A DNA stretch of 64,000 bases, from contig OZ037765.1 of the NCBI GenBank assembly GCA_964035545.1, forward strand, positions 34,285,504-34,349,503. Direction: 5' to 3'. Of the stretch, positions 4,244 to 45,599 are shown piece after piece (position 1 is the stretch's first letter; each line of letters starts with the position of its first letter). The notes under the pieces are model-generated. The model ran no database searches. It was not told where the DNA came from and saw only the letters and a list, made by a program, of their open reading frames with translations. The DNA comes from Bugula neritina (lineage: Eukaryota > Animalia > Bryozoa). A program made the position numbers and the translations under genes.

Positions 4244-4680
4244 GTGAGTCACCAGGTTATTCAGTGAGTTACCAGGTTATTATTCAGTGAGTTACCAGGT
4301 TATTCAGTGAGTTACCAGGTTATTCAGTGAGTTACCAGGTTATTCAGTGAGTTACCAGGTTGTTCAGTGAGTCACCAGGTTATTATTCAGTGAGTTACCA
4401 GGTTATTCAGTGAGTTACCAGGTTATTATTCAGTGAGTCACCAGGTTATTCAGTGAGTTACCAGGTTATTCAGTGAGTTACCAGGTTATTATTCAGTGAG
4501 TTACCAGGTTATTATTCAGTGAGTCACCAGGATATTCAGTGAGTTACCAGGTTATTCAGTGAGTTACCAGGTTATTCAGTGAGTGACCAGGTTATTCACT
4601 GAGTTACCAGGTTATTCAGTGAGTTACCAGGTTATTCAGTGAGTTACCAGGTTATTCAGTTAGTCACCAGGTTATTCAGT
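4244..4680. repeat. 20-bp minisatellite (GTGAGTTACCAGGTTATTCA)n, unit A
   Basis: Seen directly. Confidence 0.95.
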
Positions 4681-9027: not shown

Positions 9028-9064
9028 ATGGGTCAACGTAAATCTGTTCCTAGAGACGAATCAA
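9028..9064 (+). CDS. Copy 1 first coding exon MGQRKSVPRDES (N-myristoylation consensus)
   Basis: ATG GGT CAA CGT AAA TCT...TCA A|gttagt; phase 1 joins the 9948 exon in frame; same sequence in copy 2. Confidence 0.7.
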
Positions 9065-12000
9065 GTTAGTAAATCATATAAATATAAATACTACCAGTTA
9101 TAGCTGCAGAATTTTTACATTATACGTTTTTATGAGTTATATGACATTCAGTTGCAGCACTAGAGAAATTGAAGTAGCATTAGTTCTATAATTCTCTTAA
9201 AAAAATTTGCATTGGGGTGTGGTTAAAAATCTCACGAGAACATAACTCTATTTGTTACATTTCTGATCTAGAAACACCAGCTTTGTTCAACTTTTTATTA
9301 CTTTGCTCCTAACTTTTTGTTGACCACAACTGGGTGCATTATTGTATAATGTTATTATACTGAAGCTTATATTATAATAATATATTAAAGTATGATATAT
9401 TATTATTATACTGACTTATATTATAATATATCAAAGTATAATATATTGTTATACTGACATATATTATATTATATCACAAATAAAGTGTTATTATTATTTT
9501 ATATTATATTGTAACTAATATACTAACCTACATCATGTTACGTTACAATAATTGTAGTAACCTTAGTAAACTGTTATAACATGCACATTTTACTGACCTA
9601 TATTGCTTTATATTACATTATATTACACTAGAATACTATAACACATACTGTACAGAAGTATAAACAACATGGCTACCCTTTACCTGTCATCTGCTATAGT
9701 TGATGTCTGCATCAGTTACAGGGATGAGTCATACTCTTAGGTATAAACTGACAAAGTGGGCACAACTTGAATATACATTCAGATTTTATCACAGGATTTC
9801 AATTTAATTATCTGTAATTTTAAGTAGTTAAAATGTAAAATGTTTATTGTGTAACTATTGCCAGTTATGGTTCTATGCATTGATAGTGTTTACAAACATT
9901 CTATTATAATAAAAACTTTTATTTATAAAGTAGTGAATATCTTGTAGGGAAGTACAGTGTGTGGTTCAACACATCCAGTATAGATGGAGCTGATGATGAG
10001 TGGATGGAGAATGATATCACATCCTACACTATAGAAGAGATCAATGATATAAGTAGACATCATACAGTTATAACTCATGTTATACTGAAGCATGACATTC
10101 TTCCAAATATCAACAAACTGTTTCCTCATCTCACACATCTGAAGGTATCTGGAGTAGAGAGTGATGCTAACTGGACCAGGTATTATTTTATTACAATATG
10201 AAACTATATTAATAAGTGAGATATTATCTTGTAGTAGAATGTGGAGTAATCTCCCTTCACAATAACACTAGCTTTAGTAACAATTTTTGTATTATTTACC
10301 TTATTTATTGTATTTCTATTTATGCTTCAATTTAAAGTGAGTTGGTGTCATTCAAACATAGTCTAAACATATAATAGTATAATAGTATGTGATAATTATG
10401 TAGAATTGAATATACTGTTACACCTGTATATAATTATTATGTTACAGCATATCTTCACTGAAGAATCTTGAGGTATTGGATATGTCATTCAGTGACTTAT
10501 CTAAAGGTCTACCAAACAATATATGCAGATCCTTACCATCATTGAGAGAATTGTACATGGAGGTCTGTCAACTTCCAACTCTACCAAAAAGGTGTGTATT
10601 ATATTATACATTACGAATTTATCTGCACTATCTTTATTGAGTCAACTAGACTCTGTGTATATTATACGTCACAAGTCAATTATTGTATTCTATTCTATTA
10701 GATATGTATACTCAGATAGAAATGGTATAACAAATTCTCATTTATTACTCTAATAAATCTGGACAAGTAAATTATTTTGCAGTATAACTATATAACTATG
10801 TTGCATTAAATAGGTTATATTGAGAACAGGTGATAATACAGACCCTTTTCCAATGCCCCCCCCCCCCCCCCGGTACTCAATTTCAAGTTAGGAGTTGAGT
10901 CCTCTTCAACAGGGATTGAGTTAAACCATGTTTTAGAGAGAAAACTAATTACAACTTTAAAGTTTGACTGTTATTTAAAATCTCAACTATGCTATGGAAT
11001 TGTTCTTATAGGAGATAGATATTCTGGTATAGCACACATATTAGCAGTTCAAGAAATATTTTACAAACATTTCTTCATAATAAGTTTTGAAAAAAAGTAA
11101 ATTTGAAAGCCTTTTCGTGATTTTGGTTATTGAGCAATGCTGAAGAGCAGTTGAGGTATGAATTCCTTTATTTATTTGTTGTGCTGGCTGTCACCACTTT
11201 GTTTAGATCTGTTAACCTTTCAATTCCTTGGAAAAGGGTCTACTGATATAAAATAAGCTATACTCTTAAGTGAACTATTACACTGTTGAGTGAAATGTAG
11301 AGTGCTAATGATAATACCCAGGAGTTCAATAGACTTTGATGATTTTCTACCCGTGTGTTATATGTTACAGCATATCTTCACTGAAGAATCTTGAGGTATT
11401 GGATATATCACATAACTACCTATTTGAAGGTCTACCTGACAATATATTCACATCCTTACTGTCACTGAGAAAGTTGTACATGATGGACTGTAACCTGTCA
11501 ACTCTACCAAACAGGTGTGTATCATTTAATTGTACATATATAATAATATAGAGTAGGAGAAACTCTACTAACTATACAATATTAATTCATGACTTGGCTG
11601 TTAAAATATTATTATTGGAGTGGTTTGTGCAGTACATGTGTACTTGATATTCAGGTAAATGACAACTCTCAATACTCTGTTAGTAAAAGTAGATTTGATG
11701 TCATGTTTTTATGGGTTACATGCTGTGGTTATATTCTTACTAAAATATTATACAACATTTCATACCTGTATGTTATGTTACAGCATATCTTCACTGAAGA
11801 ATCTTGAGGTATTAAATATATCATATAATAACCTATCTGAAGGTTTACCTGACAATGTATTCACATCCTTACTATCATTGAGAGAGTTGAACATGGTGAG
11901 GTGTGAACTGCCAACTCTACCAAACAGGTGTGTATTATATTAGCCAATCCAAAGATCAGCACCATGAAAGTCAGTCATATGTTGCTGCCTTTTTCTATCA

Positions 12001-15000
12001 AAACTAAATGCATAAACATTTTACTCACTAACATAGAGCCAAATTTTAACTGTATGTTTTTTGGCATAATACACCCCAATATAGGGGGCAGGTTGAACTG
12101 CCCGTGGGAAAGTTGAATCAATGCGTTTATCCTATAATATAATTTGTTTTATCTATTTTGTAAGTTAAAAAATGACTTATTAAAAAGTAACAATAAGAAT
12201 CATTAAAAAAATTAGAACAAATAACAGAATTTCTGAATGTGATCTATCATTGTAACCATTCAACATCTCAAAGTAGATACTTTAAAACCCAAGCAGCAGC
12301 AGCAGCAAACTGGCAGGAAGCTCTTTTTGCAATTCATCCTTGAACAATGTATGCAGATATGAGATGGGGTCCTCTCATATGACATCAGAAAATACACAGC
12401 GCAGCATGGTTGAGTCTAACCAACTTATTTTGTTGGCTGTTTGAAGGCTCTCAACCTAATGAATTACACTATCCTGCCTTGCTTTACCGTTATAGGTCAT
12501 TGCCCAGCTTTGAAACTATGTTGAAAATATATTCTTGAACTTGACTGATCTATTAAAACTTGAGAAGCTATGCAAGTTTTTATGAAAATGGCAAATTTTT
12601 AATTTGATCATTTTTATGCAAACAGTGTGAAAAATCCTCTCTCACCTGAAAACTTCATTTCATACATTTCCATATGTTTGATAATGTTGTGAATTTATGC
12701 CGTTAAATCTCAATGTGTTATTGAGATTAGAGCATAAGCTGGTATATTGCGAGTGTAATATTCTATTTATCTGAAGCAAGATTTCATACCTGTATTTAAT
12801 ATGTTACAGCATATCTTCACTGAAGAATCTTGAGGTATTGAATATATTAGATAACTACCTATCTGAAGGTCTGCCTGACAATATATTCACATCCTTACTG
12901 TCATTGAGAATGTTGAGCATGGAGAACTGTACACTACCAACTCTACCAAACAGGTGTGTATTATATTATACATTATGAAGTTATCTGCACTATCTTTATT
13001 GAGTCAACTAGACTCTGTGTATATTATACGTCACAAGTCAATTATTGTATTCTATTCTATTAGATATGTACTCAGATAGAAATGGTATAACAACTTCTCA
13101 CTTATTACTCTAATAAATGTGGACAACTCAATAGATCCCATTCAGAGGTCCTCAAGATCTCCCTTACATTTAAGAGTTGTGTCCTCCCAAAAAGAAAATA
13201 GATTGAACAAAATAATCTTGAATTCCTTTTTGTGACTTTGGTTGCTGAGCAATGCTGAAGTGCCACTTCAGCATTGCTCAGTAAAGAAAATCACAAAAAG
13301 GAATTCAAGTTTATTTTTTTCAAAATTCTCTTGAAGAAATATCTTTAAAAAAAATTTTCAACTGCTAATATGTGTGCATATACCAAAATATCCATCTCCT
13401 AAAAAAACAATTCTATAACATAATTATAATTTTAAGTAGCAGCCAAATGTTAAATTTTGAATGGGTTTGCTCTTTAAACAAAAGTTCAACTTACTTACTT
13501 TGAGAAGACGTAACTCTTAAGTGTAAAAGAGATATCCGGGCACCTGAAAAGGGTCTATTATTTCAAATGAAATAAGTTATATTAAATTGAGTTATAAATA
13601 TGTTATAATATTATGCAATGCTCATATATTGTTAAGTATAGAATGTACAGTAATAGTAATAATATGTAGTATAGTTAAATTAACTTTGATTATTTTCTAC
13701 CTGTATATTTTTATGTTACAGCATATCTTCACTGAAGAATCTTGAGGTATTGAATATATCACAGAATAACCTATCTGAAGGTCTACCTGACAATATATTC
13801 ACATCCTTACTATCATTGAGAAAGTTGGGCATAAATAGTTGTAAACTGTCAACTCTACCAAACAGGTGTGTATCATTTAATTACATGTATAATAATAATA
13901 TAGAGTAGGAGAGACTCTACTAACCATACAATATTAATTCATGACTTGACTGTTAAAATATTATTATTGAAGTGGTTTGTGCAGTACATGTGTACTTGAT
14001 ATTCAGGTAAATGACAACTCTCAATACTCTGTTAGTAAAAGTAGATTTGATGTCATGTTTTTATGAGTTACATGCTGTGGTTATATTCTTACTAAAATAT
14101 TGTACAACATTTCATACCTGTATATTATGTTACAGCATATCTTCACTGAAGAATCTTGAGGTATTGTATATGTCAGAGAATAACCTATCTGAAGGTCTAC
14201 CTGACAATATATTCACATCCTTACTATCATTGAGAGAGTTGAACATGAAGAACTGTGAACTGTCAACTCTACCAAACAGGTGTGTATTATATTACATTAT
14301 GAAGTTATCTGCACTGTCTACATCAGGCGCACCAAACGCTGTGTGTACAAGATTTCTTAAGACAATTACTATATTGTATCAGATGTACACAAATAGAAAT
14401 CATGGTATGACAATTTCTCATTCATTACTCTGATATATGTTGTCAACTAAATTATTCCGCAGTGAAATATGTTATATTGAGACTAGGTATGAATATGTTG
14501 CAATGTAAAACTATACTAGAACATAAATGAGCTATTGAGTAAAATGTGGAGTATTAATACGTATTATAGTTAAATTGACTTTGATGATTTTCTACCTGTA
14601 TTTTATAGCAGCATATCTCCACTGAAGAATCTTGAGGTATTGAATATATCAGAGAATAACCTATCTGAAGGTCTACCTGACAATATATTCACATCCTTAC
14701 TATCATTGAGAAAGTTGAACATGAGGAACTGTAAACTGTCAACTCTACCAAACAGGTGTGTATTATATTATACATTATGAAGTTATCTGCACTATCTACA
14801 TCAGGCGCACCAAACGCTGTGTGTACGAGATTTCTTAAGACAATTACTATAATATTGAGTCAGATGTACACATATAGAAATGGTATGACAATTTCTCATT
14901 CATTACTCTGATATATGTTGACAACTAAATTATTCCGCAGTGAAATATGTTATATTGAGACTAGGTATGAATATGTTGCAATGTCAAACTATACTAGAAC

Positions 15001-18000
15001 ATAAATGAGCTATTGAGTAAAATGTGGAGTATTAATACGTATTATAGCTAAATTGACTTTGATGATTTTCTACCTGTATTTTATAGCAGCATATCTCCAC
15101 TGAAGAATCTTGAGGTATTGGATATATCAGAGAATAACCTATCTGAAGGTCTACTTGACAATATATTCACATCCTTAATATCATTGAGAGAGTTGAACAT
15201 GAGGAACTGTAAACTGTCAACTCTACCAAACAGGTGTGTATTATATTATACATTATGAAGTTATCTGCACTATCTACATCAGGCGCACCAAACGCTGTGT
15301 GTACGAGATTTCTTAAGACAATTACTATAATATTGAATCAGATGTACACATATAGAAATGGTATGACAATTTCTCATTCATTACTCTGATATATGTTGAC
15401 AACTAAATTATTCCGCAGTGAAATATGTTATATTGAGACTAGGTATGAATATGTTGCAATGTAAAACTATACTAGAACATAAATGAGCTATTGAGTAAAA
15501 TGTGGAGTATTAATACGTATTATAGCTAAATTGACTTTGATGATTTTCTACCTGTATTTTATAGCAGCATATCTTCACTGAAGAATCTTGAGGTATTGGA
15601 TATATCACAGAATAAGCTATCTGAAGGTCTACCTGACAATATATTCACATCCTTATTATCATTGAGAGAGTTGAAAATGGGTAGCTGTAAACTGTCAACT
15701 CTACCAAACAGGTGTGTATTACATAATAGTGTAGAAAGATAATTATTGTAATAAATATAAGTTAAAAATATATTTTTACATGTGTTCATAAAACTCTAAC
15801 AGATTTGCTACACTGAGATATATTATAATATTATACTGAGATACATTATAATGTTATACTGAGATATATTATAATACTATATATACTGAGATCTATTATC
15901 ATGCTATACTGAAATATATTATAATATTATACTGAGATATATTGTAATATTATAGGGGGTAACAGGGGCACAACGGTCATAGGGGTAGAAAAAGCCGGCG
16001 TAAATATTTTAGGATGTCGTTGAAGCCTTATAACTTTTTACACTCAAAGGCAAGAAGCCTAAATTTTACTAATATTGTTGCCATTGCTTGTCTCTACAAT
16101 GCTTAACTAGTATAACAGCAAAAACTGAAATAAATTTTCCTTGAGGCACATTTATTTTCAATTTGGCCACATGGGGCACAATGGGCCACCTGATTATTGC
16201 ACCCTGATCACTGTTATTAGTTTGTTTGCCCAAAAAGTTGGTTGAACTGTTACTAAAATCTATAAATATAGCCATTTCTGACCTTTTTGTAAAATATCAA
16301 AGACATCATGGTAAGACTACAAAACTACAAGTTGAAGCTCCCCTAATACATACATCTGGTGAGGTTGAAGCTTTGCCATTTTATACATAATACAAAACAC
16401 TCCGCTGTTGCTACTTGCTACTAGTAGATAGTCATGATAATCATTATATATTACACCATTGAGGGAATATACATGCATTTGACTGAAATAAATTGTGATT
16501 TGCTCATTCGCTCTCCCCTTTCCGTTCCGTACTCCAGTCACAAACCTCAGCCATGCATGCACCTTAGCTACAGTTCATTGAAAAAAGTTCACTCAGAATT
16601 TTTGTAGTACATTTTAGTAAAGTTTTTTTTAATAAACGTTGCTCTGAAGTGAAAATAACAAAACATTTTTAGTTTTTAACAGTAATGATAATGGCACTGC
16701 AGAACCGAGTGACGTGCGTTTGATTTTGCCTTCCTCTGCTATCCGTAGTGGCACAAACCGTACAGCTAAAACATGAATTTTGCTGTAGATCTGAAAGAGT
16801 ATCTTTATTTATTTGTATTATTAAATAAATAAAGATCAGATACAACAAAATACGCAAAATTTCAATATATTTGTTGTGTCCCATTGTACCCCGGTACTGG
16901 GGCACAATGGGCCAATTTTTTCGTCATGAAAATTTCATTATTCTGAAAGTTGTGAAAGAGATAGAAACAGGAAACTGGTACCTGTAATAGATAACAGATG
17001 TAGCATTAAGACTAGAGATTATTGAACTAGTAACTTGAAAAACAGACAAATGAGAGCAACAAATGCAAAATTCGGCCGGTTGTGCCTCCCCCCCCCCCCC
17101 CCCCCCGTTACCCCTACTGAGATATAATATAATGTTATACTGAGATATAATATAACGTTATACTGAGGTATATTATAACGTTATACTGAGATATATTATA
17201 ATGTTATACTGACATATATTATAATGTTAGACTGAGATATAATATAATATTATACTGAGACATATTATGATATTATACTGAGATATACTATCATGTTATA
17301 CTAAGATTTATTATAATGTTATACTGAGATATATTATAATGTTATACTAGCTGAGATATATTATAATGTTATACTAAGATATATTATAATATTGATTATT
17401 GTTGTAATTTGCACAATTACTATGCTTGGGTTTTGCTTGCGAGTTCAGTATGCTTTTCTAACTAGTAATTACTAGGGTAGTAGCCGTATAATAATTTTTA
17501 TTATCCACAATAAACACAGTATAAAACATCACATCAATTTACTACAATACAATAGCCATCTAATACTACGTGTACACACTTCGAGTCCTCGCTCACAACA
17601 ACGTGATAATTGTTAACTACCTGAGAACTGTCACTGGGCCGGAAAATCATCTTCCGGTTCTTCTTATTGGATAATACATTGGGGCCTTTAGTATTCCCGA
17701 GGAGATAAGATGGAGGAGAGGAGATAATTCTACATTATGATACTGCGTGACCCACTACAATATTATACTGAGATATATTATAATGTTATACTGAGATATA
17801 TTATAAGATTATACTGAGATATATTATAATGTTATACTGAGGTATACTATAAGATTATACTAAGATATATTATAATGTTATACTGAGATATAATATAATG
17901 TTTTACTGAGATATATTATAATATTATACTGCGATATATTGTAATAGTATAGTGAGATATATTATAAGGGTAATCAATAAACAGTTACTGTGTGATGCAT

Positions 18001-21000
18001 TGTATAATTAACCTGCCTTATTCCATCAAATACCAGGGAGTGTAACTCCAAGCATCTATGAAATATAATTACTAAACAATAGAAATTGCAGAGAATCTTA
18101 TATATTTACTACAGTGGTATTATATTACAAAGTATATTATGGAATTTTATTATTTATATGTTTATACAAAAGCCTTTTCAAAACAACAATTGTATTTTTG
18201 TCAGCGTACAGATTCTACAGAAGTTAGAGGAACTGGACATATCGTCAAGTAACTTCACCAATTTACCATCTCCTGTGTACACACTGAGTAGTCTGCAAGA
18301 ACTGAATATATCTTCCAATTACTCTTTGACATCCTTAGGATCTGAGATATTACAGCTAACTCAACTTCGTACACTGTATGTTAGAAATTGTGATGCTCTC
18401 ACCTCTCCTCCACTGGAAGTATGTCAGAGAGGAGTAGATGCTGTGAAACAATACTACACAGACTTGGCTAAAGGAGCTGGTAGACGTCTTCCATTCGCTA
18501 CTATAGCTGTGCTGGGTAATACGATGGCTGGGAAGACCAGTCTAATTAGAACATTACAGAATGCTGACAGAAAGAGAGTTCTGACCGACAGAGGACCAGA
18601 TGCTGTGAGAGATGAGGCAACAAAGGTGTTCAATGTTGAAGAGTTGGAGGTGGATGGTACAGTACTCCGTCTCATTGATATGGGAGGCCAGGAGGTCTAC
18701 CATATCACTTATCAACTAACACTGAGACAAAATTGCATTCCAGTCATAGTAGTCAACATGGAACAGTACGAAGAGGTTTCAAATGAATCAACACACAGAG
18801 AAGCTGTTAAAAGATTAGCCTTTAATTACATGTCTCACCTCTACCTGGCTAACCCAACCCTGGGTGCTCCAAAACTTATCTTCACACATAAAGATAAGTT
18901 TCAAAATGTGGAATTCCAAGAGCTTCGAACGAACTTTCTAGACACTTCCAATCAGCTGTGTGAGGAGATGATTAAAGAAGAGAAAGCATTGGGTGGAGAA
19001 TTTGCTCAAATCAAACATTTTAGTGAATCAACTAAAGGAGTCTTTCTTGGTGAAGACATTTATGAGGTGGGGAAAGATGATAAGTATGAAGTGTTTGACC
19101 TGATCAGGGAGTCTTTTCTTCAAAGCAGTCACAATTTTGTGAAACCATTACCTTTGGTCTGGGAGGAAGTAAATGAAAAAGTGCTGTCTATTCCCTCTGT
19201 GTACAGCACCTTTGATGAGATACTGAAATACGTGCAAACCGAACTTCAACAAATCGAATCGAGTCAGCTGGACATAATCCTCACATACATGCATGACTGC
19301 GGCAAAGTCTTGTGGTATAAAGATATCAGCTCTCTCCGGCCATACATATTCCACAAGATTCCACAAGTCACCAAACTTCTCTGCGTCTTGTATCATCATG
19401 ATCCTGACATATGGCAGAGTAGAGTTGACAAGTTCCAGCCATATTTTTCAGAGGATGGGATGCCTGTTGAAAAAGAAGACTTCAAAAGATTTGTTAATCA
19501 TTTCACTAAGACTGGTTTAATGATGCAATGCCTTCTCACTCATCTGGTTAAACAAGAAACGCCATTTACTGGTCTGGAAGATGTAAAAGTTGCTGTTTGC
19601 TTGCTCCTCACATTCCGTTTGTTATATGGTCCTTTACCTGCTGATTTCAAAGAGCCCTGTTTTATTGTTCCTCAGTTTGCTAATGACCTCTTTGATACCT
19701 CTTACTCTTCGCCAAAGAATATGCTTCTTCGAGTTGAAACCCAATTCAAGGGCTTAGCGCTACCACAATATGTCTACCAGCAGATGAATGTTGGTTTGCT
19801 AGAGTTGTTTTCCGATGAATTTGCTGTGATTAAAGTGAAGAAAAATGGCGCCAATGTCTATCAAGATGGTATCTACACACAGCTGGTACACGACTACAAA
19901 TCTAGAAAAGTGTCACTCCACGTGTCATCTAATGCTGCCAACATCAGCAGAATGTGGGAGAGACTCATCACCACCAACAACAACATCCTTAGACATGTTC
20001 TAGAAACTTGGAAAGCGAGTAGACCAGTCACTACATGCTACTGTGCTCACTGTCTTCTGCTAGGACTTCCTTGTCCTAATAAAGTGCTGAATCCTCTGTG
20101 GTGTCTTCGCTCCTTGAAACATTCCACACCAACAAGTCCCAGACTGTGCAGCGGATCTTCAACAACCCTGTGTGGTGATGAGGAGATACCCAGTGCTCTT
20201 CTGTATCCATGTACGTGTAATTTTATTTCAAAAATAGTTGATTTCTCTGTGGTTTATTTATCAACTTCTATTATTGGAATAATTTTTGTGGTAACTGACA
20301 GTTTTTCATTCTCCAGGCAGTCCTCTCTATCCAGAAGAAGCTGATAACATAAAAGAATGTGTCAACAAACTGAGATCTGCAAGAGAAGAAACTGCTTCAA
20401 CTGTCCCTGGTAGGATCAGTTGTCTATCATAAACTGTTACTGTTAGAAGTAACATCCTTTGCCTGAGCTCAGTCATATGTAAACAGCAAAGGACAAGAAC
20501 TCATGACCCTCAGTTATATAGGCTCTCTGCAAAAGCTCACACACCTTCAATTGTTTTAATTTATTTGTATAATTATTGACTGAAAAACACTCAAGTACTG
20601 ATTCGATTCATTGTTTATAGTCCTTTTGATACTTAGTATCTGTTACTTAGCACTGAATATATCTCTTTTTCGTTTTATTTTAGAGATGGGTAGAGAAAAG
20701 AATTGGTTAACTCAAACTACCTCAGTCCTTGTTGAAAACGACAACATCAGTGAATGCTCTGATGTTGAAGAGGAAGGATATGCTGACTTCACTAAAGATG
20801 ACCTTGAACCTTTCATATCTCTAGTTGAGGGTATGCAGCTGAAACCTACCAACAATGAACCAGTAAAACAGCTGTTTGACAACGACCGACAGGTAAAACA
20901 AGTTTTTTGATTTCTTTTTAGATCATTGATTAATATTTTTTTGATATTATGGCTCTTCATCTAATTTCTATTACATTTCATACTTGATTTGATTAATCCA

Positions 21001-22781
21001 TTTTCTGTTGTCTACTTTTAGTAATATAAAATTGATTGGTTTGCAGGTTTATGCGATGAGTGACCCTGTTAGAGGTCGTGTCATGATCATAAACAATGAG
21101 AGATTCTTTAGAGATGATGGCAGTGAACTGACTGAGGCAACCCGAGATGGTTCATACATCGACTATGTTAACATCAAAACTCTGTTGAAAGACATGGGAT
21201 TTGTTGTAGCCAATGAAGATGATCCTCTGTTTGACCTGAGTAAACAGGTTACTGTATCAATTTCTTATCTTTTCCTGTAGTTTATTCTCCCCAGGCTGTA
21301 GCTAGCTGTGATATAGCCTATAGCAAGTATTTTTACTGCAGAACCGAGGCATTGTATTCCAACAAATCTACAATAATATATTGTTAAATTGTATTCAAAT
21401 TATTAGTTTTTCTCAGTTCTGAGTTTTAGTTTAGAAACAGCAGCACTACTTAATAGTTCATCTTTGTTATAAATGTTTTAGTGTAATTTTGAAGCAGCTT
21501 TTGCTCGTGCGTAGAAACATTTACTTATCCAAACTTGATTTTACACACCATTATATACTTTTATTTTGCCAGGAGATATTATCAGAAGTGAGGAAGGAGA
21601 CCACCGACAAAGACCACAAAGATCTTGGCATGTTCATTCTAGTCATCATGTCACACGGAACTTCTGGAAACATCTTCTATGACAAATACTGTAAACCTGT
21701 CAACTTGTCAGAAGTCAAAGATTTACTCTCAGCTAGTAACTTTCTTGCCATGAGAGGAAAACCCAAACTCATCATCTTCCATGCTTGTTCTGGCAGTGAG
21801 TAATGCAGAGTTGTTCGTCATGTTACTAGAACTAGCAGTTAGATTGCATAGTTTCCTATAACTATAACATTAATTAATTTAAGGAATCATTATTTTCAAG
21901 ATGCCTTATGTTATTGGAGTATGCCTATGTGGAAGTGAGCTACACCTCATAACTGGAATCCAATAAACAGTGCTGTGTAATAGAGTTCTGCTTGTGAATC
22001 CAGTCCTAACTTATTACTTACCAACAAATCACAGAGTCTACATTATATGTATTTCATATACAGGCAGAGCTGACTTTGGTAATGCTGCACAGTCGCAAAG
22101 CCCAGACACCGTCTCACCACCAACGCCAACCCCTCTACCCTCATCTTCTGCAACAGCTGGGAGTGAGTCTTCTGCAGGTCAAAATGTGTCTCCAAATATT
22201 CACTTTGATAAATTCACTCACCTAGATGCTGATGACTTCTACATTGTGAAGCCAAGTACAGAAAGTTAGTGAGAAGAAAATTATATTTGAGTTGACTAAA
22301 ACTTTTATTGGTGCAAATTAAAATATTTGTTGCATGTAAATAAAACTATAGTAAGAATTAAATAGAAAGTATTTCACATATCAATTTGGCCTTCATATTT
22401 AACTGCTCATTTTCATGTGTTGCAGCTTACAAGGCTGGTAGGAATGAGAATTATGGTACCTGGTTTATCAGAATACTGGTGGCTACATTCTACAGACACA
22501 GCTGTCACAGAGATGTTAGTGAGCTGTTTAGGATAGTAAGTACTTCAGTATTACTCTTTGTATGATACTGTGGAGTGTGTTGAGTCATCAGCTTTATATT
22601 TCTCTTATATTTATACTTACAGATACAAGACAGAGTTAGACGAGTCAGTATTGCATATTGTAAGAAGACAGGAGATGAAGCAGCTGGTGGTAATGTACCT
22701 AATTGTCAGGAATGTACTTTCACTCACCTCAGAAAACTTTTCTTCTTCCCAGAGTTCCATGGCAGACAACTCCCACAGTGA
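9028..22781 (+). CDS. LRR-Roc-COR-caspase fusion gene, copy 1 (19 coding exons, ~1588 aa)
   Basis: Hand-spliced exons: 9028-9064, 9948-10179, nine 144-nt LRR exons (starts 10448, 11371, 11784, 12810, 13722, 14136, 14612, 15090, 15568), 18205-20210, 20317-20409, 20684-20892, 21047-21247, 21573-21795, 22064-22264, 22426-22535, 22623-22781 (TGA). All introns GT-AG with compatible phases; total 4767 nt. Motifs: MGQRKS, LRRs, GNTMAGKTS/DMGGQ/THKD, SHG...HACSG, GTWFI. Confidence 0.85.
9948..10179 (+). CDS. Copy 1 exon 2 (N-terminal cap / degenerate LRR)
   Basis: cttgtag| ... ACC AG|gtatt; lies in ORF 9959-10201; contains LFPHLTHLKV. Confidence 0.75.
10448..10591 (+). CDS. Copy 1 LRR cassette exon 1
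   Basis: 144 nt, phase 2-2; ISSLKNLEVLDMSFSDLSKGLPNNICRSLPSLRELYMEVCQLPTLPK. Confidence 0.85.
10840..11241. mobile_element. MITE in LRR intron 1-2
   Basis: 14-bp TIR AGACCCTTTTCCAA / TTGGAAAAGGGTCT. Confidence 0.65.
11371..11514 (+). CDS. Copy 1 LRR cassette exon 2
   Basis: 144 nt; ISSLKNLEVLDISHNYLFEGLPDNIFTSLLSLRKLYMMDCNLSTLPN. Confidence 0.87.
11784..11927 (+). CDS. Copy 1 LRR cassette exon 3
   Basis: 144 nt; ISSLKNLEVLNISYNNLSEGLPDNVFTSLLSLRELNMVRCELPTLPN. Confidence 0.87.
12810..12953 (+). CDS. Copy 1 LRR cassette exon 4
   Basis: 144 nt; ISSLKNLEVLNILDNYLSEGLPDNIFTSLLSLRMLSMENCTLPTLPN (not in the ORF track). Confidence 0.87.
13130..13559. mobile_element. Related MITE, opposite orientation, in LRR intron 4-5
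   Basis: Ends AATAGATCCCATTCAG / CTGAAAAGGGTCTATT; body is reverse-complementary to 10900-11145; internal hairpin. Confidence 0.6.
13722..13865 (+). CDS. Copy 1 LRR cassette exon 5
   Basis: 144 nt; ISSLKNLEVLNISQNNLSEGLPDNIFTSLLSLRKLGINSCKLSTLPN. Confidence 0.87.
14136..14279 (+). CDS. Copy 1 LRR cassette exon 6
   Basis: 144 nt; ISSLKNLEVLYMSENNLSEGLPDNIFTSLLSLRELNMKNCELSTLPN. Confidence 0.87.
14612..14755 (+). CDS. Copy 1 LRR cassette exon 7
   Basis: 144 nt, TAGCAG acceptor; ISPLKNLEVLNISENNLSEGLPDNIFTSLLSLRKLNMRNCKLSTLPN. Confidence 0.87.
15090..15233 (+). CDS. Copy 1 LRR cassette exon 8
   Basis: 144 nt, TAGCAG acceptor; ISPLKNLEVLDISENNLSEGLLDNIFTSLISLRELNMRNCKLSTLPN. Confidence 0.87.
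15568..15711 (+). CDS. Copy 1 LRR cassette exon 9
   Basis: 144 nt, TAGCAG acceptor; ISSLKNLEVLDISQNKLSEGLPDNIFTSLLSLRELKMGSCKLSTLPN. Confidence 0.87.
15812..17967. repeat. 23-bp minisatellite (ACTGAGATATATTATAATGTTAT)n interrupted by insertions; also 37817-38173 and 40245-40420
   Basis: Seen directly, in the intron before the Roc-COR exon. Confidence 0.88.
15955..17114. mobile_element. Non-autonomous Tc1/pogo-like DNA element
   Basis: TA-GGGG(G)TAAC...GGCACAAC / GTTGTGCC...GTTACCCC-TA ends; internal GGGGCACAATGGGCCA motifs; an inverted end fragment recurs at ~35010-35148. Confidence 0.7.
18205..20210 (+). CDS. Copy 1 large exon: 3 LRRs + LRR-Roc linker + Roc GTPase + COR + Cys-rich segment
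   Basis: Inside ORF 18086-20344. PPLEVCQRGVDAVKQYY linker, P-loop GNTMAGKTS (18515-18541), DMGGQEVYHITYQ (G3), THKD (G4), COR-like PLVWEEV and YMHDCGKVLWY, then CYCAHC. Confidence 0.92.
21047..21795 (+). CDS. Copy 1 caspase large subunit (p20) exons 21047-21247 and 21573-21795
   Basis: VYAMSDPVRGRVMIINNERF...TRDGSYID...GF; FILVIMSHG (His 21654-21656); GKPKLIIFHACSG (Cys 21786-21788). Confidence 0.92.
22064..22781 (+). CDS. Copy 1 caspase intersubunit linker and small subunit (p10) exons 22064-22264, 22426-22535, 22623-22781
   Basis: Ser/Pro-rich linker with QSPD-T; DFYIVKPSTETYKAGRNENYGTWFIRIL; ends TFTHLRKLFFFP, a typical caspase C-terminus. Confidence 0.88.
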
Positions 22782-23494
22782 GTGACGTCTGCAGCACATC
22801 ACGTGTTCACATGCAGCACACACAGACCTGCCATATTAGCTAGACACTTGCAGCTGCTAGACAGACTTGTCATGTCTTTGATTTTATGCAATCATTTCTA
22901 ATTTTATTAGTTTATATATTTTTCATGTACCTGTGACATTATTTTTATTCTGCTAAGTTTTTTATACAAGCTTTTCAATTTTACCAATTTATTTGTAAAC
23001 AGTTGATAGACGTTATCACATATTGGTGAGCAGTAGCTATTCCATACTGTAAGACCTGATCAATATCTGCTGGGAGTGGAAAGTCATGCTTAGACCCCAC
23101 ATTTAAGTTATTAATGGGATCAATAACACATTTAAGTTAGCAACTTTTCCCATTACTGCTTTTTCAGTTTCTTAGCTGCTATAAATAGAGACATGATGGG
23201 TTACACAAAGGATTTTATGAATATTTATATTATATAATATGTAAAAGTATGATAGTAATAATAGGTAGCTTTTTCTTTGCTATGTACAAGCTATCAAATT
23301 ATAGCTGTTGTAGTTAAACACTGACAGACTGTAGCAGTATTTTAACTTCTGTTGTAACTGAAACCTCAGTGATCAGTCAATCAATATATAGTTGTGATTT
23401 ATTGTTAGTTTGTGGTTTTAATGATTTCTTTTAGTTGCCACTTATGCAGTTTTTATATCAAAAGTGATTGTATGTTTTTATAAATATATTATAT

Positions 23495-24083
23495 TATATC
23501 TACTCTGTACACTACATACTATATCTACTCTATACACTACACTATATCTACTCTGTACACTCTACTATATCTACTCTATACACTGTACTATATCTACTCT
23601 ATACACTATACTATATCTACCCTATATACTATACTATATCTACTCTATACTATACTATATCTACTCTATACACTATACTATATCTACTCTATACTATACT
23701 ATATCTACTCTATACACTACACTATATCTACTCTATACACTATACTATATCTACTCTATATACTATACTATATCTACTCTATACACTATACTATATCTAC
23801 TCTATACACTATACTATATCTACTCTATACACTATACTATATCTACTCTATACACCATACTATATCTACTCTATACACTATACTATACTATATCTAGTCC
23901 TTACTATATCTACTCTATACACCATACTATATCTACTCTATACACTATACTATATCTACTCTATACACTATACTATATCTACTCTATACACCATACTATA
24001 TCTACTCTATACACTATACTATATCTACTCTATACACTATACTATATCTACTCTATACACTATACTATATCTACTCTATACCA
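23495..24083. repeat. 23-bp satellite at the unit A/B junction
   Basis: Seen directly. Confidence 0.95.
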
Positions 24084-35428: not shown

Positions 35429-38400
35429 ATGGGTCAACGTAAATCTGTTCCTAGAGACGAATCAAGTTAGTAAATCATATAAACACTACGTAACCATGGT
35501 AACTACAGAACTTTTATATTTTACTTTTATGTGTTATGACATTCAGGTGCAGTAGTGGAGAAGTTGAGATAGCATAAGTTCTTTATTGTTCATAACAAAT
35601 TATACGTTGGGGTTTGGGTTTACATTGTCACGAGAACACAACTTCTTTTGCTACATTTCTGATCTAGAAACACATGCGATTTTCATTTCTTTACCCTGCA
35701 CTAATTAGGACCACAACTGAGTAATATTTTGCTGGTGTTTATTATATAATGTTATATATTATATAATATTATATACTGATTGTTAGTTATATAATGATTT
35801 AGCTTCGCCCATGTATTTCTATATACAGTGTTGAGTGAGATCTCTTCATTTAAATTCTCATGAGAACATAACTCCTTTTGTTACATTTATAATCTACAGT
35901 TTCATTACTTTGCACCTAGCTCTGTTTTCACCATAGCTGAATATTATATTGTTATAGTGTTTATATACTATAACTATTATGCTATAACTATTATACTATA
36001 ACTATTATGCTATAACTATTATACTATAACTATTATACTGTAACTATTATACTATAACTATTATACTATAACTATTATACTATAACTATTATACTGTAAC
36101 TATTATACTATAACTATTATACTATATCTATTATACTGACTTATATTATATTATATTGTATTATATTATATTATATTATATTATATTATATTGTATTGTA
36201 TTGTATTGTATTGTATTGTATTATATTGTATTATAATATATTATATTATATTATATTATAACATATACTGTACAGAAGTATAAACAACATGGCTACCCTT
36301 TCACCTGTCAGAATATCTCACAGGATGTATTTTGAAGAACTTATAAAATCTCCAAGTTTACTTAAACACTGTTTATAGTGTTGAGACACTCTATTATTTG
36401 ATATCAAAGTTATTATTTATAAAGTGGTGAATATTTTGTAGAGAAGTACTATGTGTGGTTCAACAAATCTAGAATAGATGGAGCTAATAATGAGTGGATG
36501 TGGAATGATATTAAATCCTACACTATAGAAAAGATCAAGAAGAAAAGTAGACATCATACAGTGACTCATGTTGTACTGAAGTATGACATTCCTCCAAATA
36601 TCAACACACTGTTTCCTCATCTCACACATCTGAGGGTATCTAGAGTATACAGGAATGCTGACTGGACCAGGTATTATGTTGTTATTATAATTTATAACTA
36701 TATTCATAAGTGAGATATTATCTTGTAGTAGAATGTGGAGTAATCTCCCCTCACAATAACACTATAGCTTTAGTAACAACTTTTGTATTATTTACCTTAT
36801 TTATTGTATTTCTATTTATGTTTCAATTTAAAGTGAGTTGCTGTCATTTAAACATAGTCTAAACATATAATGTATAATAGTATGTGATAATTATGTAGAA
36901 TTGAATATACTGTTACACCTGTATATAATTATTATGTTACAGCATATCTTCACTGAAGAATCTTGAGGTATTGAATATGTCATTCAGTGACTTATCTAAA
37001 GGTCTACCAAACAATATATGCAGATCCTTACCATCATTGAGAGAATTGTACATGGAGGTCTGTCAACTTCCAACTCTACCAAACAGGTGTATATTATATT
37101 ATACATTATGAAGTTATCTGCACTATCTTTATTGTGTCAACTAGACTCTGTGTATATTATACGTCACAAGTCAATTATTGTATTCTATTCTATTAGATAT
37201 ACTCAGATAGAAATGGTATAACAACTTCTCACTTACTCCTCTAATAAATTATTTTACTGTGTAACAGTTTATATTGGCACCAGGTATAAAATTTGTTATA
37301 ATATAAAATTATATCCATATAAGTTAGATACTCTCTTGTAGCTGATTGTAATGTGAAGCTATTATACATTTCTCTTTCTCTTTGAAATAACCTGAGTCTT
37401 AGTAGCAACTGCTGTATTATTTATCTGGCTCTTAGTGGTCAGATCAAGAGTTAAGTAAAACTAAATTATTCTTATTCAATAATAATACTTTTATATAGTA
37501 GGTCAACTTACTACCTTTTCGTTATGTTACAGCATATCTTCACTGAAGAATCTTGAGGTATTGAATATATCAGCGAATAAGCTATCTGAAGGTCTACCTG
37601 ACAATATATTCACATCCTTACTATCATTGAGAGAGTTGAACATGAAGTACTGTAAACTCCCAACTCTACCAAACAGGTGTGTATTATATTATAGTGTAGA
37701 ATGATACTGTAATATATATAATATATAAACATAAAGTCAATATAATTGTGTAGAAACTTATGACATAATATTTTACCATAATCAGAGTGATTTATAATAT
37801 TATAATTATGTCTATTATGAGATATATTATAATATTATACTGATATATATTATAATGTTATACTGAGATATATTATAATATAATACTGAGATATAATATA
37901 ATGTTATACTGAGATATATTATAATGTTATACTGAGATATAATATAATGTTATACTTATATATAATATAATATTATACTGAGATATATTATAATGTTATA
38001 CTGAGATATATTATAATGTTATACTGAGATATATTATAATATTATACTGCGATATATTGTAATAGTATAGTGAGATATATTATAATGTTATACTGAGATA
38101 TATTATAATGTTATACTGAGATATATTATAATATTATACTGAGATATAATATAATGTTATACTGAGATATAATCAGGGATGTAGTGGTACCCATACGGTC
38201 CCATACGCCGTATGGCCTAAAAGAAAATAGGCTGTTCTTGGCCATACGCCCGTATGGGCATATATTTTTTGAAAGTGTTAGCCTAGGGCCACACTGTGCG
38301 TGCGTGATAAATAAAGCTTTCATTTTTAAATCGCACTCCCTTTCAATAAAACGTAATTTACTGGAATTTAGCACTAAAATAAAGAAATTGGGCTCGCTTA

Positions 38401-45209: not shown

Positions 45210-45599
45210 GTGACGTCTGCAGCGCATCACGTGTTCACATGCAGCAGACACAGACCTGCCATATTAGCTAGACACTTGCAGCTGCTAGACAGACTTGTCA
45301 TACGTTGTTATACGTGCATTTTAGTTTTACCAATTTATTTGTAAACAGTTGATATGCGTTATCACATATTGGTGATCAGTAACTCTTCCATACTGTAAGA
45401 CCTGATCAATATCTGTTGTAGTTAAACACTGACAGACTGTAGCAGTATTTTAACTTCTACTGTAACTGAAACCTCAGTGATCAGCCAATCAATATATAGT
45501 TGTGGTTTATTGTTAGTTTGTGGTTTTAATGATTTCTTTTAGTTGCCACTTACGAAGTTTTTATATCAAAAGTGATTGTATGTTTTTATAAATATATAT

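What the first reader, a model, noticed from the sequence alone, without database searches (positions are those of the whole stretch)
10448..15711. Array of nine interchangeable 144-nt phase-2/2 LRR cassette exons with variable exposed positions
Each exon encodes two LRRs (48 codons) on a near-invariant frame ISSLKNLEVLxISxNxLSEGLPDNIFTSLLSLRxLxMxxCxLxTLPN. Variation concentrates at the x positions of the LxxLxLxxN/CxL strand. The second-repeat segments read KLYMMDCN, ELNMVRCE, MLSMENCT, KLGINSCK, ELNMKNCE, KLNMRNCK, ELKMGSCK, with few changes elsewhere. Symmetric phase lets any exon be skipped, duplicated or swapped in frame. This parallels the exon-shuffled hypervariable LRR-ROCO genes of the brown alga Ectocarpus and, loosely, lamprey VLR cassettes. 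Inference: a diversifying ligand-recognition surface, possibly combinatorial through alternative splicing or recombination.
Basis: partly seen in the sequence, partly recalled or inferred. Interest (0 to 1): 0.88.

Follow-up and report, generated by a model that had tools for sequence, protein, structure and literature searches.

The report
Fast-evolving LRR cassette exons, bryozoan ROCO-caspase
Nine look-alike 144-base exons build the leucine-rich-repeat sensor arm of an LRR-Roc-COR-caspase gene in what is probably a moss animal (bryozoan), and their exposed binding positions change about seven times faster than the neighbouring introns, which marks a large, apparently undescribed germline family of candidate non-self receptors.

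Summary
Nine exons at 10448-15711 are each exactly 144 nt, flanked by AG and GT, and open. All are in phase 2/2 with an AG|C (Ser) junction codon, and each encodes two LRRs. Two more lie in the next paralog.

They form the sensor arm of a gene built as short N-terminus, LRRs, Roc-COR GTPase, caspase. It is one of three tandem units in the window. The genome holds at least 74 Roc-COR exons (113 candidates) and at least 161 cassettes of this type.

In a sample of 74 cassettes, the eight most variable codons all sit at x positions of the two LxxLxLxx(N/C)xL motifs. In 19 independent recently duplicated pairs, non-synonymous change at these codons is 7.1 times the flanking-intron divergence (P about 4e-54). 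Framework change equals the intron rate.

Cassette number differs between close paralogs: 9, 8 and 2. At least one exon was replaced precisely between unchanged introns.

Germline diversification by duplication, unequal crossing-over, exon-confined conversion and selection is therefore well supported. Alternative splicing and somatic shuffling could not be tested and have no support.

The closest known analogue is the exon-shuffled LRR-ROCO family of brown algae. The scan had already met this family on other DNA of the same genome (s1-453596, s1-444236).

The parts
9028..9064 (+). Candidate exon 1 (context). It encodes MGQRKSVPRDES, followed by a GT donor. The start resembles an N-myristoylation motif (MGxxxS).
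   Evidence: Read directly from the sequence. The 43-nt stretch is identical in unit B at 35429-35471, while the surrounding DNA is about 84% identical. There is no RNA proof for this exon.
9948..10179 (+). Exon 2: short N-terminal region with a first LRR-like turn. It ends ...ACC AG|gt (phase 2).
   Evidence: ORF frame and sequence. The GT..AG joint 10179->10448 appears in runs X2 and X1.
10448..10591 (+). Cassette A1, a divergent 'first-slot' type (…DMSFSDLSKGLPNNICRSLPSLRELYMEVCQLPTLPK).
   Evidence: It is near-identical to B1 (2 nt different), and their flanking introns are 95-97% identical.
11371..11514 (+). Cassette A2.
   Evidence: Against A5, the downstream intron differs at 4/197 positions but the hypervariable codons differ at 11/24 nt.
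11784..11927 (+). Cassette A3.
   Evidence: Against A6, the upstream intron differs at 5/200 but the hypervariable codons at 7/24.
12810..12953 (+). Cassette A4.
   Evidence: It is identical to the cassette at C1:34231289 in the 8-cassette paralog.
13722..13865 (+). Cassette A5.
   Evidence: The two-cassette block 11294-11942 is duplicated as 13642-14294 at 90.8% identity.
14136..14279 (+). Cassette A6, the first unit of the 478-bp tandem repeat.
14612..14755 (+). Cassette A7.
   Evidence: Against A8, the introns differ at 4/400 and the exons at 4/144, and all four exon differences are non-synonymous.
15090..15233 (+). Cassette A8.
15568..15711 (+). Cassette A9, a 'last-slot' type (…ELKMGSCK) also found as the last cassette in two paralogs.
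   Evidence: Against A8, the upstream intron differs at 1/200 but the hypervariable codons at 6/24.
18205..20214 (+). Large exon (2010 nt, also phase 2/2) carrying four more LRRs plus Roc GTPase plus COR.
   Evidence: Acceptor ag|C at 18205 and donor GTGTAA at 20215. Pfam Roc PF08477 scores 30.4 bits against a cut-off of 27. The AF2 model has pLDDT 89.7. Foldseek matches LRRK1 8e05 at 1.9e-24 and the C. tepidum LRR-Roc-COR structure 6hlu at 1.1e-22.
21008..22269 (+). Caspase (Peptidase_C14) exons, context only. Boundaries are approximate and ORF-based: 21008-21280, 21489-21803, 21970-22269.
   Evidence: Pfam PF00656 at 3.5e-11 and 7.6e-4. The SHG and ACSG motifs are visible in the translations. 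The same architecture occurs in Watersipora XP_067947674.
36943..37086 (+). Cassette B1 of the adjacent paralog (unit B).
37533..37676 (+). Cassette B2. Unit B has only two cassettes before its intact large exon, which starts at 40643.

Best explanation
The array is the germline-encoded, modular sensor arm of one member of a very large family of LRR-Roc-COR-caspase (ROCO-type) genes in an animal that is probably a cheilostome bryozoan.

How the array is built. Each 144-nt exon encodes a two-LRR super-repeat. All introns are in phase 2 and every junction codon is AG|C. Tandem duplication, loss by unequal crossing-over, and replacement of a cassette therefore always keep the reading frame.

How the array evolved. 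It grew by nested tandem duplications that carried the introns along. The contents of the exons then diverged far faster than those introns at eight positions. These positions lie on and just after the beta-strands of the concave LRR face. The divergence came from positive diversifying selection on point changes, plus exon-confined gene conversion among more than 160 cassettes that share a near-identical framework.

How the protein is inferred to work (not shown). It is read here as an intracellular single-chain receptor, perhaps membrane-tethered. The variable LRR face binds a non-self or altered-self ligand, the Roc-COR GTPase acts as the switch or oligomeriser, and the C-terminal caspase is the effector. 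Most likely all cassettes of a gene are spliced in constitutively, and diversity lies between genes and alleles rather than between cells.
For: Structure of the array:
- Exact 144-nt phase-2/2 exons with intact splice sites.
- 74 of 75 sampled family cassettes have the same form, and 73 are distinct proteins.

Where variation sits:
- All eight top-entropy codons are x positions of the two LRR motifs (P = 1.6e-6).
- In a confident model of the contiguous homologous LRRs of the same protein (pLDDT 89.7), the strands lie at residues 9-11 and 32-34.
- By register these are cassette codons 9-11 and 34-36, with codons 14, 16, 38, 39 and 41 in the loop just after.

Rate tests:
- In 19 disjoint recent pairs, intron p = 0.040 and hypervariable pN = 0.286, a 7.1-fold excess (Fisher P = 4e-54).
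- In the same pairs, framework pN = 0.039 and pS = 0.035.
- Codons 14, 34, 36, 38, 39 and 41 are individually significant after Bonferroni correction.
- Inside the window, A8-A9 differ at 1/200 intron positions against 6/24 hypervariable nt, and A2-A5 at 4/197 against 11/24.
- For the window alone, dN/dS is 2.2 at hypervariable codons and 0.53 in the framework.

Recombination:
- The 478-bp tandem units are 96% identical.
- A 98%-identical paralog has 8 colinear cassettes against 9 here, and unit B has 2.
- The cassette at C1:34392666 keeps the introns of the first slot (0/98 upstream, 4/100 downstream).
- Its exon nevertheless differs at 21-23 nt from the first-slot cassettes A1 and B1.
- That exon is only 3 nt from a cassette with unrelated introns.

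Gene context:
- Roc, the COR fold and the caspase domain are present.
- 113 candidate and 74 scored Roc-COR exons are mostly open.
- The Watersipora homolog has the same domain order and 141/153-nt ag|C…AG|gt LRR exons.

Transcription:
- Splice joints and exon-only depth are seen in RNA-like runs.
Against: - No isoform-level RNA data were available, so constitutive inclusion of all nine cassettes is assumed, not shown.
- Reads at 93% likeness or more may come from paralogs.
- Gene conversion and point-mutation selection cannot be cleanly separated. Conversion inflates the apparent substitution rate, and tree-based site models were not run.
- The hypervariable codons were chosen by their variability. 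The per-codon Bonferroni tests against the intron rate mitigate this circularity but do not remove it.
- No ligand, no expression response and no biochemical evidence exists for the receptor/caspase mechanism.
- The hypervariable positions were mapped to the concave face by register with neighbouring LRRs, not on a model of the cassettes themselves.
- The bryozoan assignment rests only on the best named homologs (31-39% identity) and is not proven.
Confidence: 0.75

Rival explanations
1. Transcript-level combinatorial diversity. The symmetric cassettes are alternatively spliced (skipped in varying combinations), so one gene yields many LRR arms, as reported for brown-algal LRR-ROCO genes.
For: - Phase symmetry with a fixed AG|C junction allows any skip in frame.
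- Alternative splicing of LRR exons is reported in Ectocarpus ROCO genes (PMC11378527).
- One contig in run X2 joins 10588 to 15565.
Against: - The 10588->15565 joint has only 24 letters on its short side, and those letters are identical in every cassette. It fits unit B (two cassettes) or any other paralog equally well.
- Other joints are consistent with consecutive splicing, for example 12951->13721.
- All splice sites look equally canonical.
- No long reads were available.
- A protein search from the cassette found only unspliced genomic ORFs.
Confidence: 0.12
2. Somatic DNA-level diversification (VLR-like). Cassettes are copied or rearranged in somatic cells to give clonally different receptors.
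For: - The genome holds a large pool of more than 160 framework-identical cassettes.
- Exon-precise replacement has demonstrably happened at least once in the germline lineage.
Against: - Every unit examined is a complete, spliceable gene with its own cassettes. There is no incomplete 'acceptor' gene flanked by promoter-less donors.
- The observed replacements and number changes are fixed differences between paralogs in one assembly.
- DNA-like runs gave no interpretable structural variants.
- No evidence for a deaminase or recombinase was sought or found.
Confidence: 0.02
3. No adaptive diversification. The x positions are simply unconstrained, the framework is kept uniform by purifying selection and concerted evolution, and the apparent excess comes from conversion that moves existing neutral variants around.
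For: - Across all pairs, hypervariable nt divergence (0.36) is no higher than near-splice-site intron divergence (0.28-0.39).
- Conversion is real.
- Framework pN is about equal to pS in recent pairs.
Against: - In recent duplicates with introns only 4% diverged, hypervariable codons are already 29% diverged at non-synonymous sites.
- Conversion alone homogenises. Keeping 65 distinct codon 34-41 strings among 73 cassettes beside synonymous framework sites that differ by only 5.7% needs selection for diversity, or targeted mutation.
- The residues used are rich in the charged, aromatic and small polar residues E, D, R, K, W, Y, N, S and G.
Confidence: 0.08
4. Assembly artefact or decaying pseudogene array with no function.
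For: - The 478-bp repeats at 96-99% identity are the kind of sequence assemblers can mis-count.
- Several paralogous Roc-COR exons carry one stop, including the 98% paralog.
Against: - All 11 cassettes and 74 of 75 family cassettes are open with intact AG/GT.
- The large exons of units A and B are open.
- RNA-like contigs show spliced joints.
- The exon architecture is conserved in Watersipora.
Confidence: 0.02

Closest known systems
Brown-algal (Ectocarpus, Saccharina) LRR-ROCO genes with exon-shuffled LRR exons (Zambounis et al. 2012, PMC3341825; Teng et al. 2024, PMC11378527)
   Same: - N-terminal LRR followed by Roc-COR.
- LRRs are encoded by equal-length, frame-symmetric exons that duplicate and shuffle.
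- Positive selection acts at concave-face positions.
- The genes are clustered, with pseudogenes among them.
- They are proposed immune receptors.
   Different: - Here there are two LRRs per 144-nt exon, not one per 72 nt.
- The host is an animal.
- A caspase domain follows COR. The word 'caspase' does not occur in the text of the 2024 survey.
- The family is larger, with at least 74 Roc-COR exons against 9-47 genes per alga.
- The framework is far more uniform, even at synonymous sites.
- Exon-precise replacement between conserved introns is documented here.
- Alternative splicing is reported there and untested here.
- No algal sequence was among the best 150 matches. Common descent of the exon structure was not tested.
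Lamprey and hagfish variable lymphocyte receptors (VLR)
   Same: - Diversity is carried by LRR modules with variable residues on and next to the beta-strands of the concave face.
- There is a large genomic pool of framework-identical cassettes.
- Gene-conversion-like copying of cassettes occurs.
   Different: - VLR cassettes are non-spliced donor fragments copied somatically into an incomplete germline gene. Here every cassette is a normal exon of a complete gene.
- The changes seen here are germline differences between paralogs.
- No LRRNT or LRRCT caps and no signal peptide were noted by eye in the translated exons.
- The protein looks intracellular and is fused to a GTPase and a protease.
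NLR / STAND receptors (animal NLRs, plant NB-LRR R genes) and apoptosome or inflammasome logic
   Same: - The architecture combines an LRR sensor, an NTPase switch and a death effector.
- The families are lineage-specific and clustered in tandem.
- Solvent-exposed xxLxLxx residues are under diversifying selection.
- Unequal crossing-over and conversion act between paralogs.
   Different: - The switch is a Roc-COR GTPase, not a NACHT or NB-ARC ATPase.
- The LRRs are N-terminal.
- The caspase is in the same chain instead of being recruited through CARD, PYD or death-fold adaptors.
Prokaryotic AP-GTPase (Roco) conflict systems and metazoan ROCO proteins (LRRK1/2, MFHAS1, DAPK1)
   Same: - The LRR-Roc-COR core fold is shared (Foldseek hits to 6hlu, 8e05 and LRRK2).
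- Kaur et al. 2021 (PMC8195603) describe rapidly evolving N-terminal LRRs and variable C-terminal effector domains in the bacterial versions.
- NCBI's automatic annotation names the Watersipora homologs 'MFHAS1 homolog'.
   Different: - Vertebrate ROCOs are few, single-copy signalling proteins without hypervariable LRRs.
- The bacterial genes have no introns or cassettes.
- Sequence similarity to bacterial COR proteins is weak (E 1e-8 to 1e-13).

Membership tests
ROCO proteins (Roc-COR tandem) | Roc (Ras-of-complex) GTPase domain with P-loop and switch motifs | tested here: met
   Pfam PF08477 scores 30.4 bits against a cut-off of 27 (E = 5.2e-7) on the large exon. The motifs GNTMAGKTS, DMGGQ and HKDK are visible in the translation.
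ROCO proteins (Roc-COR tandem) | COR domain directly C-terminal of Roc | tested here: met
   The window exon itself gave no Pfam COR hit. However, the AF2 model (pLDDT 89.7) aligns over Roc-COR with C. tepidum Roco 6hlu (1.1e-22), 3dpu RocCOR (5e-18), the 3dpt COR domain (1.3e-10) and LRRK1/2. Homologs carry PF16095.
Leucine-rich repeat (typical/'SDS22-like' LxxLxLxxN/CxL) modules | Repeats of about 23-25 residues with the LxxLxLxx(N/C)xL motif forming a beta-strand | tested here: met
   Pfam LRR_1, LRR_4 and LRR_8 hit single cassettes. Two motifs per cassette are invariant at the L and N/C positions. Strands are modelled at the equivalent positions of the neighbouring contiguous LRRs. The single-cassette model itself was poor (pLDDT 71).
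Exon-shuffled LRR-ROCO receptors (brown-alga type) | One LRR per 72-nt frame-symmetric exon | tested here: not met
   Here there are two LRRs per 144-nt exon, and 141 or 153 nt in Watersipora. It is the same principle with a different unit.
Exon-shuffled LRR-ROCO receptors (brown-alga type) | Evidence of exon duplication or shuffling and of variable exon number between paralogs | tested here: met
   Tandem 478-bp units. Colinear paralogs have 9, 8 and 2 cassettes, and about 2 to 9 across the family. Exon replacement between conserved introns is documented.
Exon-shuffled LRR-ROCO receptors (brown-alga type) | Positive selection at concave-face positions | tested here: met
   Hypervariable pN is 7.1 times the intron divergence, and six codons are significant after Bonferroni correction. 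Window-only dN/dS at hypervariable codons is 2.2. No likelihood site model was run.
Exon-shuffled LRR-ROCO receptors (brown-alga type) | Alternative splicing of LRR exons | not testable with these tools
   Only short Logan contigs were available, and the cassettes are near-identical at their ends.
Exon-shuffled LRR-ROCO receptors (brown-alga type) | Common descent with the algal genes | not tested
   The best relatives are bryozoan and unnamed metagenomic or transcriptomic proteins. No phylogeny with algal ROCOs was built.
VLR-type somatically assembled LRR receptors | An incomplete germline gene plus non-spliced donor cassettes assembled somatically | tested here: not met
   Units A and B are complete genes whose cassettes have canonical AG/GT sites, and spliced joints are seen. 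Somatic variation itself is not testable here.
Caspases (Peptidase C14) | Caspase fold with a His/Cys catalytic dyad, in the same gene | tested here: inconclusive
   PF00656 at 3.5e-11 on 21489-21803, with SHG and ACSG present. The Watersipora homologs carry the caspase in the same annotated protein. That the caspase exons are spliced to this gene's Roc-COR exon was not shown by RNA here.

The most novel reading that the evidence does not exclude
The pool of more than 160 framework-identical, frame-symmetric cassettes may be used combinatorially within an individual colony. This could happen by regulated exon skipping or by somatic exon-precise conversion of the kind seen once in the germline record. 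Zooids or cells of a colonial animal would then express different LRR-Roc-COR-caspase receptors. That would be an anticipatory or allorecognition system independent of VLRs and immunoglobulins, wired directly to a death protease.
Probability: 0.07. Interest if true: 0.93.

Novelty: new variant of a known kind. Interest (0 to 1): 0.64.

Why it matters
If the reading holds, an animal lineage has independently built, or retained, the exon-cassette route to LRR diversity so far described for brown-algal ROCO genes. It has coupled that route in one chain to a GTPase switch and a caspase, and expanded it to roughly a hundred genes.

That gives a compact, testable model of how a sensor, a switch and an executioner can sit in a single protein. 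It is also a candidate for pathogen sensing, symbiont control or colony allorecognition, in a phylum for which my searches found no paper describing immune receptors.

The intron-calibrated contrast is an unusually clean natural example of diversifying evolution. Exposed codons change 7 times faster than the introns that flank them, and the framework changes at the intron rate. The documented exon-precise replacement shows how symmetric exons let conversion shuffle recognition modules without disturbing gene structure.

Tried and rejected
- Fetching the whole 1.1-Mb cluster. I did not try to obtain more genome letters by another tool. The analyses therefore rest on 75 of at least 161 cassettes. 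An ortholog test against the metagenome contig L002 (89% colinear with C1:22720209-22724343) could not be completed.

- Exon skipping from reads. Read laying gave only short contigs. The joints 10588->15565, 11904->10444 and 15711->15571 are ambiguous because cassette ends are identical and paralogs map at 93% or more.

- Spliced multi-cassette peptides. A protein search on the cassette region within a longer genomic ORF returned only unspliced genomic ORFs from metagenomes.

- Single-cassette AlphaFold model. Confidence was mediocre (pLDDT 71, the other four models 52-56), and a helix ran through the second motif. I did not use it for mapping.

- Joined spliced protein. Mapping of the hypervariable sites used the contiguous LRRs of the large exon instead.

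- Block-wise recombination test. I asked whether pairs with a similar upstream flank share the first variable block (codons 11-16) and pairs with a similar downstream flank share the second (codons 34-41). The signal was weak and one-sided and is not claimed.

- 'Nearest exon has unrelated flanks' screen. Most flagged cases are expected by chance given the uniform framework. Only C1:34392666 is compelling, and C1:34545471 weaker.

- Literature. Four searches for an animal or bryozoan LRR-Roc-COR-caspase family found nothing relevant. The library is not exhaustive.

- Likelihood site models (PAML, HyPhy) are not installed and were not emulated.

Full report
WHAT IS THERE

The window is AT-rich eukaryotic DNA (21-41% GC in 2-kb steps). 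It holds three tandem paralogous units of about 22 kb each: A at roughly 1-23.5 kb, B at roughly 23.65-45.5 kb, and C from about 45.6 kb to the end of the window.

Unit A contains nine exons at 10448-15711. Each is exactly 144 nt and has AG before it and GT after it. Each begins with C and ends with AG, and each holds 47 uninterrupted codons.

The upstream exon (9948-10179) ends in AG. The large downstream exon (18205-20214) begins with C. Every junction codon is therefore AG|C (Ser), and any number of cassettes keeps the reading frame.

Each cassette encodes two LRRs, and Pfam LRR_1, LRR_4 and LRR_8 hit single cassettes. Unit B has two such cassettes (36943, 37533) and an intact large exon starting at 40643.

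THE GENE

The 2010-nt exon after the array carries four more LRRs, a Roc GTPase (PF08477 above its cut-off) and a COR domain. A 56-sequence AlphaFold model of this exon is confident (pLDDT 89.7, pTM 0.87).

The best structural matches of that model are all LRR-Roc-COR proteins:
- LRRK1 (8e05, 1.9e-24)
- the C. tepidum LRR-Roc-COR crystal structure (6hlu, 1.1e-22)
- LRRK2
- the isolated RocCOR and COR structures (3dpu, 3dpt)

Downstream exons encode a caspase (PF00656, 3.5e-11, with SHG and ACSG motifs).

A candidate first exon (9028-9064, MGQRKSVPRDES) is 43/43 nt identical between units A and B, inside DNA that is about 84% identical. Its start resembles an N-myristoylation motif. That is an inference from the sequence only.

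All searches were done exon by exon, by reference.

WHOSE GENE

The best named relatives are annotated proteins of the bryozoan Watersipora subatra, at 31-39% identity over the Roc-COR exon. Two of them (XP_067947674 and XP_067948342, about 1415 aa) have the same LRR-Roc-COR-caspase order.

In the Watersipora genome, two of the LRR exons checked in detail are 141 and 153 nt with ag|C…AG|gt boundaries. Other LRR matches there are 144-153 nt, but their boundaries were not resolved. The Roc-COR region is again covered by one uninterrupted match of 2055 nt. The two-LRR, phase-2 exon architecture is thus old in this lineage.

Closer relatives (up to 88% identity) come only from 'symbiont' metagenomes, that is, host DNA. 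One such contig is colinear with a locus of this genome at 89% identity and has the same five cassettes. This suggests a sibling species. I take the organism to be a bryozoan, but this is not proven.

THE FAMILY

The genome is 216 Mb. It contains 113 candidate Roc-COR exons, of which 74 were scored at 48-100% identity, and most are open. They cluster on C1 at 33.8-35.06 Mb, where the window lies, on C6 at 2.5-6.3 Mb, on C5 and elsewhere.

A 20-mer from the cassette occurs 161 times with up to 2 mismatches, against 0 for the reversed control.

I combined those positions with the Roc exon positions to count cassettes per gene. The counts are lower bounds and run from about 2 to 9 (2, 3, 4, 5, 6, 8, 9). 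The paralog whose Roc-COR exon is 98% identical has eight cassettes colinear with unit A's nine. It lacks one 478-bp unit.

For comparison, brown algae are said to have more ROCO genes than any other organism reported so far, at 9-47 per species (PMC11378527).

WHERE THE VARIATION IS

Of these, 74 have exactly the canonical form, and 73 are distinct proteins.

Entropy per codon peaks at codons 11, 14, 16, 34, 36, 38, 39 and 41. All eight fall among the 12 x positions of the two LxxLxLxx(N/C)xL motifs (P = 1.6e-6). The residues used there are mostly E, D, R, K, W, Y, N, S and G. Codons 34-41 form 65 different strings among the 73 cassettes for which both 150-nt flanks were available.

In the confident model of the contiguous LRRs of the same protein, the beta-strands lie at residues 9-11 and 32-34. 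In the shared register these are cassette codons 9-11 and 34-36. Codons 11, 34 and 36 therefore lie in the strands, and codons 14, 16, 38, 39 and 41 lie in the loop immediately after.

By established LRR structure this is the concave face and its rim, the region that varies in VLRs and plant R proteins. The mapping is by register, not on a model of the cassettes themselves. A model of a lone cassette was too poor to use.

HOW FAST, AGAINST WHAT YARDSTICK

Over all pairs of cassettes, hypervariable codons differ at 35.7% of nucleotides. The framework differs at 5.0% (third positions 5.7%). The flanking introns are at or near random. Taken alone, that pattern could mean neutral x positions inside a homogenised framework.

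The decisive comparison uses cassettes that were duplicated recently together with their introns. I took 19 disjoint pairs whose 300 nt of flanking intron are at least 90% identical. In these pairs:
- intron divergence is 0.040
- framework pS is 0.035 and framework pN is 0.039
- hypervariable-codon pN is 0.286, which is 7.1 times the intron rate (Fisher P = 4e-54)

Codons 14, 34, 36, 38, 39 and 41 each exceed the intron rate after Bonferroni correction, with P between 3e-5 and 4e-21.

The same pattern is visible inside the reported coordinates:
- A8/A9: 1/200 intron differences against 6/24 at hypervariable nucleotides
- A7/A9: 2/200 against 8/24
- A2/A5: 4/197 against 11/24
- A7/A8: 4/400 intron differences against 4/144 exon differences, all four non-synonymous

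Nei-Gojobori estimates on the nine cassettes alone give dN/dS of 2.2 at hypervariable codons (5.5 against all-codon dS) and 0.53 in the framework.

RECOMBINATION

Unit A is a record of nested tandem duplications. The block holding A2 and A3 matches the block holding A5 and A6 at 90.8% identity. A6 to A9 form a 478-bp repeat at 96% identity.

Many cassette pairs share only one flank: 54 share the upstream flank only and 51 the downstream flank only. This is as expected from crossovers within or between cassettes.

One case is unambiguous exon-precise replacement. The cassette at C1:34392666 sits between introns that are practically identical to those of the distinctive first-slot cassettes A1 and B1 (0/98 upstream, 4/100 downstream). 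Its exon nevertheless differs from A1 at 23/144 positions (from B1 at 21), spread evenly. That exon is only 3 nt from a cassette elsewhere whose introns are unrelated.

Because cassettes share homology only within the exon, conversion tracts are naturally confined to it. Conversion therefore contributes to the 'fast' change.

Conversion by itself homogenises, however. Near-unique hypervariable strings persist beside synonymous framework sites that differ by only about 5%. That still calls for selection in favour of diversity, or a targeted mutational process, for which there is no evidence.

EXPRESSION AND SPLICING

Two RNA-like runs show depth on the exon-containing bins and about zero on intron-only bins. 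Both show the GT..AG joint 10179->10448. A cassette 4 to cassette 5 joint is also seen.

All read data were short assembled contigs accepted at 93% likeness or more, so paralogs certainly contribute.

The apparent skip 10588->15565 rests on 24 letters common to all cassettes. It fits unit B or other paralogs as well as it fits exon skipping. A protein search designed to catch spliced multi-cassette peptides found only unspliced genomic ORFs.

Alternative splicing, polymorphism between individuals and somatic variation therefore remain untested.

MECHANISM

Shown:
- the exon anatomy and its frame symmetry
- membership in a large clustered LRR-Roc-COR(-caspase) family
- variation concentrated at motif x positions and exceeding intron divergence
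- cassette gain and loss, and exon-confined replacement, between paralogs

Inferred:
- The LRR arm is a ligand-binding surface.
- The protein is an intracellular single-chain receptor, possibly membrane-tethered, in which Roc-COR is the switch or dimeriser and the caspase is the effector. This is analogous to NLR/apoptosome logic and to the bacterial LRR-AP-GTPase conflict systems described by Kaur et al. (PMC8195603).
- All cassettes are normally included in the transcript.

COMPARISON AND NOVELTY

The closest described system is the brown-algal LRR-ROCO family. It has one LRR per 72-nt symmetric exon, exon shuffling, positive selection at concave-face sites and, in the 2024 study, alternative splicing.

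The present case works in the same way but differs in several respects:
- the unit is two LRRs per 144 nt
- the host is an animal
- the effector is a caspase in the same chain
- the family is larger
- the framework is extremely uniform

It is not VLR-like in mechanism. Four literature searches found no description of an animal LRR-Roc-COR-caspase family, although NCBI's automatic annotation labels the Watersipora proteins 'MFHAS1 homolog'.

The scan itself has already followed up two other pieces of this genome and reached the same family-level reading (s1-453596 and s1-444236). Two first-reader notes on this window (s1-487146, s1-487376) agree with what I found.

I class the finding as a new variant of a known kind.

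VERDICT

The 'diversifying recognition surface' reading is strongly supported at the level of germline evolution. The 'combinatorial through splicing or somatic recombination' reading is unsupported and untested.

Noticed in passing
window 52357-54750 (- strand): A non-LTR retrotransposon is inserted in the intergenic part of unit C. It has an intact 603-aa ORF with a reverse-transcriptase domain (PF00078, 2.8e-32), preceded by a 184-aa ORF with no Pfam hit. The insertion is absent from the equivalent place in units A and B.
   Followed up: partly
window 4244-4680, 28000-28995, 50023-51084 (and 1-323, 23490-24081, 45595-45996): The same minisatellites sit at the same relative places in all three units but differ widely in copy number. 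The 20-mer GTGAGTTACCAGGTTATTCA has 21, 49 and 52 copies. The 23-mer TATACTATATCTACTCTATACAC has 14, 26 and 18 copies.
   Followed up: no
window 2826-3119 and 26676-26948 (+): An ORF of 90-97 aa (MTELVEVEKTEPLVVTSNN…) is conserved between units A and B in the spacer between ROCO genes. It has no Pfam hit. It may be an exon of another gene or of an upstream part of the unit.
   Followed up: no
window 13157-13533 (core 13203-13323): A foldback, MITE-like element lies in the intron between cassettes A4 and A5. It has 60-nt arms that are 90% complementary and 1 nt apart, nested in a wider inverted repeat. A related fragment lies in intron 1 (about 11100-11150). This explains the 'goes back' joints seen in the DNA runs.
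   Followed up: partly
window 9028-9064 and 35429-35465: The candidate first coding exon begins MGQRKS, which resembles an N-myristoylation motif. It is perfectly conserved between units A and B, while the surrounding DNA is about 84% identical.
   Followed up: partly
L002:6000-10100 versus G000:C1:22720209-22724343: The 'symbiont metagenome' contigs that carry relatives of this family are only 89% identical to the colinear locus of this genome, yet have the same five cassettes. They probably come from a sibling host species, which would be useful for an ortholog-based selection test.
   Followed up: partly
G000:C1:34236261-34238006 and other places listed: About a dozen of the 74 scored Roc-COR exons carry one or two in-frame stops. 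One of them is the 98%-identical neighbour of unit A. The family therefore includes recent pseudogenes.
   Followed up: no
L031 (G000:C5:17307282-17308795): On another chromosome-scale contig, six cassettes of the same type are packed at 271-276-bp spacing, so the introns are only about 130 nt. In the window the introns are 269-882 nt.
   Followed up: no
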